NCBI RefSeq assembly: GCF_000143415.4
Contig: NW_003314270.1
Coordinates: forward strand, 2,101,048 to 2,165,047
Source: Selaginella moellendorffii
Taxonomy: Eukaryota > Plantae > Lycopodiophyta
Reading direction: 5' to 3'
DNA length: 64,000 nucleotides
Of the stretch, positions 59,321 through 64,000 are shown in pieces (the first letter of the stretch is position 1; each line of letters begins with the position of its first letter). Position numbers and translations under genes: made by a program. Under the pieces are notes generated by a model, which did not search any database, had not been told where the DNA came from, and saw only the letters and a list, made by a program, of their open reading frames with translations.

Positions 59321-61998
59321 GGCGGCGACACTTGAGCTACATTTCTGCCGGCCCAATTTTAGGGCTCTTGGATTAGGGCTTAGCCGACATCTGGGGTATA
59401 TCCCGCGGCATTTTGCGCGCTTGGAGCTTTCGAAAATTTGAGCAAGCGCGCCATTTAAGTAGGTCTCTTTAGCTAGCTGGCTGACTGGCTGGCTGTTGCA
59501 AAGCCCAAATTCAACCCCTGCGCAACACCACATGGCCACATGCCTTTCGGTACCTGCCGCGTGGCCGTCTGCCATTGGCCAGCAGCGTCGACTTCCACGG
59601 CAGCAGCAGCACATCACGAGTACAAGGCATGTCAGTACGGCGCACATGCCAATGTGTATCTCCGCTGTACGGGTACGTATTTGCGGGCGAGTGGTACCGT
59701 ATGCCCGTCAGGCACATGGGCCAAAAGCGTAGCGCGACGGGATGGTGTCAGTGGCCACATCTTCGTGTGCATGTGGACACGCAACCAAAAAGGATGCGTA
59801 CGGAACGCGGCCTTTTAAAAATCCTCGGGAGAAATATCCCAGCCCTCCTGTGGTGACCGTTGAAAGAATTTAGGGTTTTAAAGGTTAGGGCAAATTGACA
59901 TGCACGTGCAGTGTCGCTCGACTTGTTTAATCTCCGCGGTGAATCACGATTCCGGGGATCATCCAATCGCTTGTTAACAGGAGGGGCGACACATGTATCT
60001 ATCTCGGAGCTTGTCTTTGAATCACAGCGCATAGCACACGTTCACTGGCGAATTGTTTTTGTAAGCGGGACGTGTGTACGGATTAGGTCCTTGGTGTTGA
60101 CCAATCTTGCTTAGGCATTTTGTAAGGTAAAATTTACATTTATACTCCACCAACTTGGATCGTTTTCACATGACAAGCTCTGCTGGCCATGGTGTGTCCT
60201 AATCCGCGTGTTTTCAGTGTGTTGTGATAGTTTCACATGGCCAATTTGCAGGACTTGGCAATGCCCACAAACAATTCTAGGGTTCCTCCTTGTCTGTCCA
60301 CACGGTGAGATCCCTCTAACGTGTAACGTTCTAGTAGAGGGATTTTAAAGGATCACTTCGATTTGAGTAAACTTTGTGAGAAAGTTCCGATCGAATGGAT
60401 TATTAGTGTCTGCTGGCTAGCGATGCAACCGTGCATGTGGGGAGTGCATGGCACTTCCGGGACATGGGAGGTTTCTATATGATGCAAAGAATGTCTTTCT
60501 ATGTTCTAGGCAGTGTAATCAAAGGCAATAATCTACACGGGAGATAAGAAAAGGCGGAATCGAGGCTGGTTGACCGATCTCAAAGCCTGGTGAATGTCCT
60601 GACTTTGAGTTGCTACCCATGGCCACGCCCTAGAAAATCATTTCCAGGGAAACGAGGGAGCCCCAATCACCCAACACTTTCAACTGTAGAGATCTCCCGC
60701 CCCATGTCTCGCCACGCCCCCGTCCCCCAAGATCCGAAATCCACAAGGGGCCAGCTCACCCAAGTTGAATTCCTCGCTAGATCTCACATGGACGCACTAG
60801 AAACTTGTGCATGGATGCGATTGAAGCGGTGGCGAAACTTGCATTTAAAAGAGAAAACAATGCGAGGTAATTCGATCCGAGGGGCTATGGTATCCTTTGC
60901 TTCGTGTGTCGCATAGATTTACATCAAGGCGCGAGATCAATCCATAGACAATGCGAAGTAACACATGCGCTTCGCCACTTTTCTAAAACCATCCCCGGTC
61001 CTCACTTTGACTTGAGTGATGCAAATGCAAATGTATGCTGGCTGGCTGGCTAGTAAATCTTTATAAACATCAGTAAAAACCTTGGTAATCTTACCCTGCC
61101 TACAGCTCCATGGTCTAAATTCATGACATGATCTTCCCCTCCGTGTCAGGGATGGAACATGGCCAAGAAAACTAGAAGAAGCATATTCTTTGTGATTGGC
61201 CTGAAAGGTGCCGGAATTATTCGCACAGTACCCCCACAATCTTTGTTAGTGCATCATGGGCCACTCCAATCACATTCCATTCCATTCCCACACTTATTCA
61301 TTCGTTTCCAATGTAGTTAACCCTACGCCACCTTTGCGTGCACTCCATGCATACAAAGTAAGTTAGTTACCTTGCCCGTTTCCACCGTTGGATGGGCATA
61401 CGCCCGCCGATCCAACCGCTACCAAACGCGTACATTATATGTACTCTTCCGTGCGGAGTGGGCCACAACTTGGAGCAAGGGGAATATCCGTACGTGTGGG
61501 TCATTAGCACGCGCGCATGTGCCCCGGGTATCTGTATGTATCTGCCCTCTATCATTACCACCACCTGCCATCCAATTTAACTTCCATCCACACTGTCCAC
61601 GTCGGCTTTTAACCTGCGTCACATGCACAAATACATTTTCACCCGTGAGGAATATGCCGGGGGAGCTGGACCCATCGTACGTACGGCCGGTTTAGCGGCG
61701 TTTTAACCTACTAGGTTCTCCTTTAGTTTATTTTAGTTTTGTTTCTTGGTATGCGTGCTTGCGCGAGGGCTTTTTGAGCGGCATTCCTTTCCTTGCCCCT
61801 TGAGAGTTTGCTCATCGCGATCGCGATAGTTTGGCCGCTCGTCACGGTCTGGAGTGTGATCTCTCCTATCCACATTTTCCCTGATTCTTGGATCTTCGCG
61901 TTCTTTGCTCGCCCGCTCGTCCCGCGCCCATTTCCGATCGATTCTCTGGTTTCTCGGGGCAGATGCGTTGCTGATTTCTACATTCCAGCGCTCCTCTC

Positions 61999-63379
61999 AT
62001 GGCAAGAGATCCAGCTTACGATCTCTCTCGCGGTTTCACCTCTCCATGCGATTGGGCCGCCTCGTTCGCCAAGAACGAATCGCAGGCTCTAGCCGGCTTT
62101 GGCGTCGCCAGGAAATTCCAGTCGTCACGGTTACAGCAGCAGCCACTTCCCCTGAGATCCATCTTCACAGACAGTACGGTTCCAACGCTAGCTCGCCTCG
62201 CTAATTCTCCAGCCACAAGGGATGATGGAGCGAACGAAATTTGTGCCAGGAATGGAGCCCCTAGCAGCGCGAATCCACAAGACCCAATCGATGGATTGGA
62301 TCTTGGGCAAAGGCCCGAGGCGACGTCCGAGTCGGGCTGGACGGCCTACTTGGATATCTCCGTGGATTGGAACGCTTACAACAGTTTGTCGAGACATCTG
62401 ATAAGACCCGGATCGATCGACGGTGGTGGGTCGATGGAGGACGAGTGGCGGGAAGATTCGTCCATGGAGTCGGACGCGTCCTCTGGTCCCGAGCAGCCCG
62501 AGCTCCTCCGAAAGGAGGGGTTGAGGAGGAACGCTCTACGGGGGAAGAGAAAGTCGGCGGCGGTGAGGGAAACCAATCCGTGTTGCGTCGTCCGGGAGGG
62601 CGATAATGATCTCGATGATACTTGCCAGTCGAATCTCAGCTGTGAGTCGGTCTCGGACGATCCGAGACCGGCTAGACGGCGATGCAAGAGAAGTAGAGTC
62701 GGCGATGATCATCAACCAGCATTGTCACGGCCTCCTCAGGTAAATTAAAACATGGGAGTTTCTGATCTGGAAACTTATCATGGATGCTTCTCTTTGCAGG
62801 TTGTAGATGAGCACTCGGATGAGAATGAGGTCGAGGTTGAGGCTGGCGAAGCCGAGATTTCCAGCCCTCCAAGCGTCAATGTAAGAAGCGAGCTTCTGCT
62901 TCCGGGCTTTGATCGTTTCGTGGATTGACGCTTTTGTCTTCCTTCTCCACCAGATACACGAGAAAGCTGTAGATTCACGCTTGGAGTTGCTGCAGCACTT
63001 GATACCACATAGTAGTAGACAGGTACGGGGCGATCTGGTTTGGCTCTTGAGAAGCGCGCTAAGTATTCCGTGTTTGTGTAAACCATTTGCAGCTGGATGA
63101 AGAGCAAGTGCTAGAAGTCGCGATCGACTACGTGAAAAGTCTGGAAGAGGAGATCAAGGTAGAGCTCCTTGGCTGCTGCGAGCGATCCTAGCGGAAGTTC
63201 TAAGCTTTGTTTTGCCTTCTCAGATGTTTGGAGCTTCAAAGGATGGATTGAGCAGCGAGCAATCTGCCTCCGCTGGCGATAGCGCAATGACCTCGCAGAG
63301 TTGCCAAGCTGCAAGTGCGTTGCAGGACAAGGGCATTTGCATGTTCCCACTGTCAATGGTGGTGGCAACGACAACATGA
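61999..63379 (+). CDS. Putative SOFL/VUP1-motif protein fused to an atypical (non-basic) HLH domain; exons 61999-62739, 62800-62880, 62954-63022, 63093-63158, 63224-63379 (~370 aa)
   Basis: Exon 1 has ESGWTAYL and SSMESDASSGP motifs. Four phase-0 GT-AG introns join it to RLELLQHLIPHSSRQ|LDEEQVLEVAIDYVKSLEEEIK| and LQDKGICMFPLS. Confidence 0.75.
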
Positions 63380-64000
63380 CGCAACGATCAGTCCTTTTGT
63401 ATGATGCATTGCTGCTGCTGCTGAGCTCCTTGTACCAGTGCCAAGTTATAATGCTCTTCTTTTTTGGTGCCAAGATCATCCACTGATCCAACAGAAAAGG
63501 GTATCATCGATGTCTTGGTTTGTAAAACAAGAATGTCTTGCTGCTTCCCAGTTTGCTGGAGCAAGAAGCATGGGCACAACACACAACACACAAATCCTTT
63601 TTGATCTCAAGCTCAACTTGTATCTTGTGTCAACTGTTAAAAAGAGGAAAGAACACCTTGCTCTTTATCTCTGGTTGGTAAGCAGATCTACACCTGCCTT
63701 TTGTTCTCATGCATGACAACACCACACACAAAACAGTGCAAGCGAAAATTTAGAAAGGTACCCACATCATATGTAATGTGTGAGTGCATGTTTGAAGCAA
63801 CAGCCAGGTAAAGTCAGGAAGGATCAAACAAGAGTTAAAACTCTTTTCTGAATGCAGCCATTCACCCAGGCAGCCATGCATGCATAAGCATTAACAACAT
63901 CCCCAATAAAGTAGGGATGATGAAACAGTACTTACTAGAAGGTAGGCTGAGCCCAGCTCTGGAGCAGCAAAATAACACAGGCTTTGAATTTGTTTGCATT

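What the first reader, a model, noticed from the sequence alone, without database searches (positions are those of the whole stretch)
61999..63379. Apparent SOFL/VUP1-HLH fusion gene: plant growth-regulator motifs spliced onto a basic-region-less bHLH
Seen: exon 1 encodes ESGWTAYL, DSSMESDASSGP and LDDT motifs. All four downstream introns are phase-0 GT-AG and keep the frame through 69-nt and 66-nt exons encoding helix-loop-helix (RLELLQHLIP...LDEEQVLEVAIDYVKSL) and a C-terminal LQDKGICMFPLS motif. The expected basic region is replaced by an acidic stretch (DEHSDENEVEVE). Established: SGWTxY and SMxSDASSGP are the signature motifs of the small stand-alone SOB5/SOFL/VUP1 proteins. The 69/66-nt exon pattern and the LxxKGLCLxPxS tail characterise plant bHLH subfamilies IX-XI. 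Inference: a chimeric, non-DNA-binding HLH that could link SOFL/VUP signalling to bHLH dimerisation. It may be a lineage-specific fusion or the ancestral state, and either would hint that SOFL/VUP proteins act with bHLH partners.
Basis: partly seen in the sequence, partly recalled or inferred. Interest (0 to 1): 0.8.

Follow-up and report, generated by a model that had tools for sequence, protein, structure and literature searches.

The report
SOFL-motif protein with basic-less HLH
This expressed Selaginella gene joins the two signature motifs of the SOFL/VUP growth regulators to a helix-loop-helix domain that cannot bind DNA; the same design in clubmosses and conifers suggests that at least the intron-containing flowering-plant SOFL5/6-type proteins are shortened descendants of it.

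Summary
Window 61999-63379 (+) carries a five-exon, 370-aa gene with phase-0 GT-AG introns, identical to RefSeq 'transcription factor BHLH089' of Selaginella moellendorffii. Spliced transcript contigs from four studies join all five exons at the predicted junctions.

Exon 1 has SOFL-A (SGWTAY) and SOFL-B (SMESDASSGP). Exons 3-4 encode an HLH with no H-E-R DNA-contact residues. Exon 5 has the KGxCxxPxS tail seen in LRL/UNE12-type bHLHs.

It is not a Selaginella oddity. The same architecture occurs in Diphasiastrum, Ginkgo, Cryptomeria (named 'SOB FIVE-LIKE 6'), Taxus and Picea. The Cryptomeria gene has the same exon plan. Ferns carry the two halves on separate proteins. The angiosperm hits I saw are short and lack the HLH. 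Amborella and Benincasa SOFL5/6-like genes keep the first two or three intron positions and stop early, at latest inside the helix-2 exon, so they look like truncated descendants.

This contradicts the published view that SOFLs arose in angiosperms and are absent from Selaginella. I found no paper describing the link. The scan reached the same reading earlier on another piece of this genome.

The mechanism is inferred: HLH heterodimerisation without DNA contact, with the SOFL motifs as docking sites.

The parts
61731..61998 (+). 5' leader of the transcript, with two tiny uORFs (ATG at 61751, 8 codons; ATG at 61963, 3 codons)
   Evidence: Transcript contigs begin at 61731-61770. The uORFs were found.
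61999..62739 (+). Exon 1, aa 1-247: the SOFL-type N-terminal region, predicted to be disordered
   Evidence: ORF and splice donor. AlphaFold2 pLDDT is below 55 throughout this region.
62329..62352 (+). SOFL-A motif ESGWTAYL (aa 111-118)
   Evidence: Invariant across 10 family members. It matches the published SGWTxY definition (PMC5873917). hhalign against angiosperm SOFLs gives E 9.7e-14.
62455..62490 (+). SOFL-B motif DSSMESDASSGP (aa 153-164)
   Evidence: It matches the published SMxSDASSxP definition. The two transcript variants that fall inside it are synonymous.
62638..62697 (+). Conserved SCESVSD motif (aa 214-220) followed by a basic patch RRRCKRSR (aa 226-233), a likely nuclear localisation signal
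   Evidence: Conserved in the lycophyte alignment, and a basic KRRK-type patch sits at the same place across the family. The NLS function is inferred.
62800..62880 (+). Exon 2, 81 nt: an acidic linker occupying the place of the first half of a bHLH basic region
   Evidence: Cryptomeria has a matching 78-nt exon and Ceratopteris a 57-nt one.
62954..63022 (+). Exon 3, 69 nt: helix 1 of the HLH, with no basic residues at the DNA-contact positions
   Evidence: AlphaFold2 helix at aa 273-290. The intron positions match those of a canonical LRL bHLH gene.
63093..63158 (+). Exon 4, 66 nt: loop and helix 2 of the HLH
   Evidence: AlphaFold2 helix at aa 300-330 with pLDDT 83-92. A 66-nt exon at the same place occurs in Cryptomeria, Ceratopteris and the Typha LRL gene.
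63224..63379 (+). Exon 5 with the stop codon; holds the tail motif LQDKGICMFPLS (63320-63355)
   Evidence: The same tail occurs in RHL1/bHLH66/UNE12-like bHLHs.
63380..63656 (+). 3' UTR
   Evidence: Transcript contigs end at 63572-63656.

Best explanation
This is a real, expressed Selaginella moellendorffii gene. Its protein is largely disordered at the N-terminus, where it carries the SOFL-A and SOFL-B short motifs and a basic, probably nuclear-targeting, patch. A single folded module follows: a helix-loop-helix domain derived from an LRL/UNE12-type (subfamily IX/XI) bHLH gene, which has lost the H-E-R DNA-contact residues and kept the C-terminal KGxCxxPxS tail.

It belongs to a family at least as old as the common ancestor of lycophytes and seed plants. 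Ferns have HLH-plus-tail copies without the SOFL motifs, and separate SOFL-only proteins. Angiosperm SOFL5/6-type proteins (VUP1-4 themselves could not be tested) appear to be truncated descendants that lost helix 2 and the tail.

Inferred mechanism: the HLH dimerises with canonical bHLH partners, most plausibly the closest clade (LRL/UNE12), without contacting DNA. That would titrate or re-target those partners, as Id, PRE and SAC51-like HLH proteins do. The SOFL motifs would act as docking sites for partners that are still unknown.

Shown: gene structure, expression, motif homology, absence of the basic region, the HLH fold prediction, and taxonomic spread. Inferred: dimerisation partners, nuclear localisation, and the direction of loss in angiosperms.
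For: - Gene model and transcripts. Four studies give spliced contigs that join all five exons.
- Purifying pattern in transcript variants: 10 synonymous against 5 non-synonymous, none altering a conserved motif.
- SOFL homology: the family profile finds named SOB FIVE-LIKE 3/5/6 proteins at E 1e-13 to 1e-7 in 5.8 billion sequences. A lycophyte-only profile against an angiosperm SOFL profile gives 98% probability, E 9.7e-14.
- HLH: the lycophyte profile hits the MYC2 bHLH structure at E 3e-4. AlphaFold2 gives helix 273-290, a loop, then helix 300-330 at pLDDT up to 92. Every top Foldseek match is a bHLH, with 5gnj at rmsd 1.1 A.
- No basic region in any of 25 family members, against H/E/R in 4 canonical bHLHs.
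- Same architecture in Diphasiastrum, Ginkgo, Cryptomeria, Taxus and Picea.
- Identical five-exon, phase-0 plan in Cryptomeria and Ceratopteris, with the HLH intron sites of a canonical Typha LRL gene.
- The family HLHs form one group in a quick tree (SH-aLRT 93).
- Amborella and Benincasa SOFL5/6-like genes keep the first three and first two intron positions. The Amborella gene stops 10 codons into the helix-2 exon and shares the P-[IV]-C-R-[ED]-E junction motif with gymnosperm fused proteins. Profile-profile comparison of the downstream regions gives E 1.8e-4.
Against: - Pfam HLH scores only 16 bits, below the 20.7 gathering score.
- No partner, localisation or DNA-binding data exist for any member.
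- The relic-HLH alignment in angiosperm proteins is only moderately significant (49% probability) and rests on two angiosperm gene structures.
- The tree uses 54 columns and a quick search.
- Several fused members come from unnamed transcriptome runs (SRR6920682 and others), so bryophyte presence or absence is unknown.
- The absence of fused forms in angiosperms is read from ranked hit lists, not from an exhaustive scan.
- The Selaginella protein lacks the LEDTASSP motif and has no recorded PF27761 (VUP_C) hit.
Confidence: 0.72

Rival explanations
1. The architecture is an ancient fusion, and angiosperm SOFL/VUP proteins descend from a never-fused SOFL gene that existed alongside it. On this view stand-alone is the ancestral state and the fused form is a side branch.
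For: Stand-alone SOFL-type proteins exist outside angiosperms: Psilotum P0007, Diphasiastrum P0008 and Cryptomeria P0180. Most angiosperm SOFLs are intronless (PMC5873917), so they carry no intron evidence either way. The relic-HLH alignment has only 49% probability.
Against: Amborella and Benincasa SOFL5/6-like genes share the exon 1/2 and 2/3 boundaries of the fused genes, and Amborella also shares the 3/4 boundary, all in phase 0. They also share the P-[IV]-C-R-[ED]-E motif at the start of the helix-2 exon. The HLH exons carry the intron sites of canonical bHLH genes, so those exons came from a bHLH gene, and their relics occur in the angiosperm genes.
Confidence: 0.15
2. It is an ordinary DNA-binding bHLH transcription factor, as its RefSeq name BHLH089 implies, and the N-terminal motifs are incidental low-complexity sequence.
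For: RefSeq and UniProt label it as a bHLH. The HLH and tail resemble LRL/UNE12-type factors.
Against: Positions 5/9/13 are S/V/E and the 13-residue 'basic' stretch has 0 K/R and 2 D/E. The same holds across 25 relatives. The Pfam match covers only profile positions 17-53. The N-terminal motifs are invariant over lycophytes and gymnosperms and are significantly similar to SOFLs.
Confidence: 0.05
3. The joined transcript is a read-through or assembly chimera of two neighbouring genes, a SOFL-like gene and a small HLH gene.
For: Ferns do encode the two halves separately. The evidence here comes from assembled contigs, not single reads.
Against: The same spliced join appears in four studies, with 84 or more bases on each side of the first junction. 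Exon 1 has no stop codon before its donor site. The same join is annotated in Diphasiastrum (four genes), Cryptomeria and Ginkgo, and seen in independent transcript contigs.
Confidence: 0.03

Closest known systems
SOB5/SOFL family (SOB FIVE-LIKE; Arabidopsis SOB5, AtSOFL1-6)
   Same: It carries SOFL-A (SGWTxY) and SOFL-B (SMxSDASSxP) in the same order and with similar spacing. Profile-level homology is E 9.7e-14. A gymnosperm member of this family is itself named SOB FIVE-LIKE 6.
   Different: It is 370 aa against roughly 110-240 aa, and it carries a complete HLH and a bHLH-type tail. It occurs in a lycophyte, whereas the family was published as angiosperm-only and absent from Selaginella (PMC5873917).
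VUP family (VASCULAR-RELATED UNKNOWN PROTEIN1; InterPro IPR039280; Pfam PF27761 VUP_C)
   Same: The precomputed PF27761 'VUP_C' family hits gymnosperm fused members and, weakly, a basic-less HLH-only member. Angiosperm SOFL5/6-like proteins (the type PF27761 would be expected to cover; untested) share exon boundaries with the fused genes.
   Different: The Selaginella protein has no recorded VUP_C hit and lacks LEDTASSP. No VUP1 sequence and no VUP1 paper could be obtained, so membership was not tested directly.
Plant bHLH subfamilies IX/XI (UNE12/PFB-type and LRL/RHL1/bHLH66-type)
   Same: These are the nearest HLH sequences that also match the tail. The phase-0 intron sites around the helix-1 and helix-2 exons are identical, including a 66-nt helix-2 exon, and the KGLCLxPxS tail is shared.
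   Different: It has no basic region and no H-E-R triad, it has an acidic exon in place of the upstream basic-region exon, and it has a SOFL-type N-terminus.
Non-DNA-binding HLH regulators (animal Id; plant PRE/KIDARI/IBH1, SAC51-like)
   Same: The expected mode of action is the same: an HLH without functional DNA contacts that acts through heterodimerisation. This is inferred from established knowledge of those families.
   Different: No close sequence relationship was found. The match to Pfam bHLH_SAC51 was weak (E 0.13, and only for paralog P0024). Its origin is an LRL/UNE12-like gene, and it carries extra SOFL motifs and a tail.

Membership tests
SOFL (SOB FIVE-LIKE) | SOFL-A domain with SGWTxY | tested here: met
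   SGWTAY at aa 112-117. The definition comes from PMC5873917.
SOFL (SOB FIVE-LIKE) | SOFL-B domain with SxxSDA (SMxSDASSxP in Arabidopsis) | tested here: met
   SMESDASSGP at aa 155-164. hhalign across both motifs gives E 9.7e-14.
SOFL (SOB FIVE-LIKE) | Small stand-alone protein with no other conserved domain, restricted to angiosperms (as published) | tested here: not met
   It is 370 aa with an HLH and a tail, and it comes from a lycophyte. Published range as stated.
VUP (PF27761 VUP_C / IPR039280) | Match to the VUP_C family model | not testable with these tools
   PF27761 is missing from the local Pfam copy. The precomputed field for P0001 is '-', while relatives P0009, P0010, P0159 and P0015 carry faint or weak hits.
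VUP (PF27761 VUP_C / IPR039280) | LEDTASSP-type motif after the basic patch | tested here: not met
It is present in the gymnosperm fused proteins.
bHLH (Pfam PF00010) | Helix-loop-helix dimerisation fold | tested here: met
   The Pfam HLH match is sub-threshold (16 bits against 20.7). However, the family profile hits MYC2 bHLH at E 3e-4, the AlphaFold2 HLH has pLDDT up to 92, and all top Foldseek matches are bHLH structures.
bHLH (Pfam PF00010) | Basic region with H5-E9-R13 DNA contacts | tested here: not met
   P0001 has S/V/E at these positions and 0 K/R in positions 1-13. The triad is absent in all 25 relatives examined.
bHLH subfamilies IX/XI (UNE12, LRL) | Conserved intron sites flanking the 66-nt helix exons, and a C-terminal KGLCLxPxS motif | tested here: met
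   Compared against one canonical gene, Typha RHL1-like.

The most novel reading that the evidence does not exclude
The angiosperm SOFL/SOB5 proteins, and probably the VUP proteins too, have no known biochemical function. They may be evolutionary remnants of an ancient basic-less HLH regulator that worked with LRL/UNE12-type bHLH factors. If so, the SOFL motifs would be the effector end of a bHLH-linked module, and present-day SOFL/VUP proteins may still act in bHLH complexes through helix-1 relics or through shared motif partners.
Probability: 0.45. Interest if true: 0.75.

Novelty: new variant of a known kind. Interest (0 to 1): 0.6.

Why it matters
SOFL and VUP proteins change cytokinin content, brassinosteroid-responsive growth and xylem development when over-expressed. 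A VUP1 homologue is a candidate style-length gene in the Linum distyly supergene. Their molecular function is nonetheless unknown.

Showing that the older form of the family carries an HLH dimerisation domain of LRL/UNE12 ancestry gives a concrete hypothesis that can be tested: these proteins act with bHLH partners. It also moves the origin of the SOFL motifs from angiosperms back to at least the lycophyte/seed-plant ancestor. Finally, it documents a stepwise domain-loss series, from five exons to four, to three, to intronless genes.

Tried and rejected
- **Pfam on single exons.** This gave nothing useful, because the HLH is split across two short exons.
- **RSS3 or PFA-type identity.** I considered whether this is the rice RSS3 or Arabidopsis PFA type of atypical bHLH. 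RSS3 is described as carrying the N-terminal domain of bHLH factors and lacking the DNA-binding domain, which is a different architecture. The RSS3 paper (PMC3694701) is not held and the PFA paper (Zhang et al. 2021, Nature Plants) was not looked up, so PFA identity remains untested.
- **VUP1 paper.** PMC3982757 is not held, so the VUP1 motifs were not checked directly.
- **Literature searches.** Searches for the locus tags, 'SOB FIVE-LIKE 6', PF27761, IPR039280 and the SRA run numbers found nothing relevant.
- **Genomic loci.** No loci were on record for P0003, P0006 or P0024, so Diphasiastrum and paralog gene structures were not compared.
- **Paralog in this window.** tblastn found no copy of paralog P0024 in this window.
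- **Careful tree search.** It did not finish, so only the quick tree is reported.
- **Joined spliced model.** It was never typed or sent to a search tool. The identical database protein P0001 was used by id. Exon coordinates were concatenated inside scripts only, to translate the model and to classify transcript variants.

Full report
**Observation**

The stretch 61999-63379 on the + strand contains an ATG-initiated 741-nt exon and four short exons of 81, 69, 66 and 156 nt. All are joined in phase 0 through GT..AG introns of 60-73 nt.

- ESGWTAYL at aa 111-118.
- DSSMESDASSGP at aa 153-164.
- An acidic exon 2.
- A helix-loop-helix spread over exons 3 and 4.
- LQDKGICMFPLS near the C-terminus.

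The 370-aa product is identical to database protein P0001, which NCBI names 'transcription factor BHLH089 [Selaginella moellendorffii]'. An older 422-aa model (P0002, SELMODRAFT_408928) mis-splices the 3' end.

**Expression**

Contigs from four public runs belonging to four different studies were laid on 61400-64000. Each gave a single 1.5-1.6 kb contig spanning about 61731 to 63572-63656. All four introns were removed at exactly the predicted junctions.

These are assembled contigs rather than single reads, which leaves a small caveat. The contigs differ from the window at 15 coding sites. Ten are synonymous and five are not, and the two that fall inside SOFL-B are synonymous. That pattern fits purifying selection.

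**The N-terminal half**

Pfam has no model that hits it. The published definition of the SOFL family is SOFL-A = SGWTxY and SOFL-B = SMxSDASSxP, or SxxSDA over all members (PMC5873917). Both are met.

A profile built from ten fused family members found named angiosperm proteins 'SOB FIVE-LIKE 3/5/6(-like)' at E 1e-13 to 1e-7 in a 5.8-billion-sequence database. A profile made only from the five lycophyte proteins aligned to a profile of 14 angiosperm SOFL-type proteins (eight of them named SOFL) with 98% probability and E 9.7e-14, over the block from SOFL-A to SOFL-B. The similarity is homology, not chance.

In the family alignment it lies upstream of the basic patch and lines up with a Cys/Ser-rich motif. 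The LEDTASSP motif of gymnosperm and angiosperm proteins lies downstream of that patch, and its position in the Selaginella protein is not conserved.

**The C-terminal half**

Pfam HLH matches only profile positions 17-53, at 16 bits, below the gathering score. Other evidence is stronger:
- The lycophyte family profile hits the Arabidopsis MYC2 bHLH crystal structure at E 3e-4.
- AlphaFold2 with a 30-sequence alignment predicts helix 273-290, a loop, and helix 300-330 at pLDDT 77-92. Residues 1-270 are disordered.
- Every top Foldseek match in the PDB is a bHLH domain, for example 5gnj at rmsd 1.1 A over 60 columns. E-values are weak, as expected for a 60-residue domain.

I anchored on the conserved L-x-x-L-I-P of helix 1 to read the DNA-contact positions. 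Positions 5/9/13 are S/V/E in this protein, and they are non-H/E/R in all 25 relatives examined. Four canonical bHLHs show H/E/R. The protein is therefore an HLH without a DNA-binding basic region.

The canonical bHLHs that match both the HLH and the tail are named RHL1-like, bHLH66-like (LRL, subfamily XI) and UNE12-like. A canonical Typha RHL1-like gene has phase-0 introns at exactly the same three sites around 66-nt helix-1 and helix-2 exons, and it has the tail LQGKGLCLMPIS. The HLH exons therefore derive from an LRL/UNE12-type bHLH gene. The upstream basic-region exon has been replaced by an acidic one.

**Distribution**

The same architecture (SOFL-A, SOFL-B, basic patch, basic-less HLH, tail) is present in:
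- Four Diphasiastrum complanatum proteins.
- A second Selaginella paralog, P0024 (SELMODRAFT_408741), which is not in this window.
- Two Ginkgo biloba proteins.
- Cryptomeria japonica XP_057853028, which RefSeq names 'SOB FIVE-LIKE 6'.
- A partial Taxus chinensis protein.
- A Picea sitchensis protein whose recorded 220-aa sequence ends in the loop after helix 1.
- Several unnamed transcriptome contigs.

The Cryptomeria gene has the same five-exon, all-phase-0 plan with a 66-nt helix-2 exon. In a quick maximum-likelihood tree of the HLH segment, the 29 family members form one group against 120 canonical bHLHs (SH-aLRT 93). The tree has only 54 columns, so its internal order is unreliable.

Ferns differ. 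Psilotum, Ceratopteris and Adiantum have HLH-plus-tail proteins of 144-201 aa without SOFL motifs. The Ceratopteris gene keeps the five-exon plan and has no SOFL-like exon within 10 kb upstream. Psilotum also has a separate SOFL-only protein.

None of those 22 is a named angiosperm protein.

**Angiosperm SOFL5/6-like genes**

The Amborella gene for P0186 has four phase-0 exons.
- Exon 1 ends just after LEDTASSP, at the same place as Cryptomeria exon 1.
- Exons 2 and 3 correspond to the linker and helix-1 exons.
- Exon 4 begins I-C-R-E-E, exactly like the gymnosperm helix-2 exon, but stops ten codons in.

The Benincasa 'SOB FIVE-LIKE 6-like' gene keeps the first two boundaries and stops in the third exon. 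A profile-profile comparison restricted to the regions downstream of LEDTASSP aligns them as expected, with E 1.8e-4 and 49% probability.

Precomputed Pfam hits to PF27761 'VUP_C' fall on gymnosperm fused proteins and, weakly, on a basic-less HLH-only protein. This fits the idea that VUP_C is a relic of the linker and helix-1 region. I could not run that model, and I could not obtain a VUP1 sequence or the VUP1 paper.

Taken together, the most economical reading is stepwise truncation of an ancestral fused gene. I put this at about 75-80%. The alternative is that stand-alone SOFLs are an equally old parallel lineage.

**Mechanism**

The only folded module is an HLH that lacks DNA contacts, and its nearest relatives are LRL/UNE12-type factors. 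The best-supported model is heterodimerisation with such canonical bHLHs. This would form complexes that cannot bind DNA, or that bind it differently, as is established for Id, PRE/IBH1 and SAC51-like proteins.

The invariant SOFL-A and SOFL-B motifs lie in a disordered region. Published point mutations in them abolish SOFL over-expression phenotypes. They would then act as short docking motifs for unknown partners. All of this is inference; no interaction was tested.

**Known or new**

The gene model and its bHLH label are already in RefSeq and UniProt, and a conifer homologue is already labelled SOFL6. However, the SOFL synopsis paper states that no SOFL homologue exists in Selaginella or Physcomitrella and that the family arose in angiosperms. 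These data contradict that.

Full-text searches for SOFL, VUP and bHLH combinations, locus tags and family accessions found no description of the SOFL-HLH architecture. Subscription journals are not covered.

The scan's own notes show that another agent reached the same reading on another piece of this genome. They also record a paralog 1.16 Mb upstream of this window. I treated these notes as leads only.

**Verdict**

I class it as a new variant of known kinds: an atypical HLH combined with SOFL motifs. It is of moderate-to-high interest because it gives the SOFL family, and possibly VUP, a mechanistic lead that can be tested.

Noticed in passing
window 63701-63869 (-): One run (X7) has a short 169-nt contig on the minus strand just downstream of the gene, probably the end of a neighbouring convergent transcript. 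The old 422-aa model P0002 wrongly reads through this region.
   Followed up: no
window 61751-61777 and 61963-61974 (+): There are two very short upstream ORFs (8 and 3 codons) in the 5' leader of the transcript. Their significance is unknown.
   Followed up: partly
L004:10001-11667 (Ceratopteris richardii): This fern HLH-plus-tail gene keeps the five-exon plan, but its exon 1 has no SOFL motifs, and no SOFL-like exon lies within 10 kb upstream. Psilotum encodes the SOFL-only and HLH-only halves as separate transcripts.
   Followed up: partly
L001, L005, L006 (Logan run SRR6920682): One unnamed transcriptome holds at least three divergent fused paralogs (P0156, P0157, P0163). Some lack the tail and have a longer loop. 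The organism could not be identified.
   Followed up: partly
Diphasiastrum proteins P0008 (07G098000) and P0006 (07G098100): This is a pair with consecutive locus tags on the same contig, so probably adjacent. One protein is annotated as SOFL-motif only (179 aa) and the other as fused (265 aa). This is either a truncated model or a recent HLH loss.
   Followed up: no
L012:1-1264 (Benincasa hispida): The SOFL6-like gene lies directly downstream of a xanthine/uracil permease gene. This is noted as context only.
   Followed up: no
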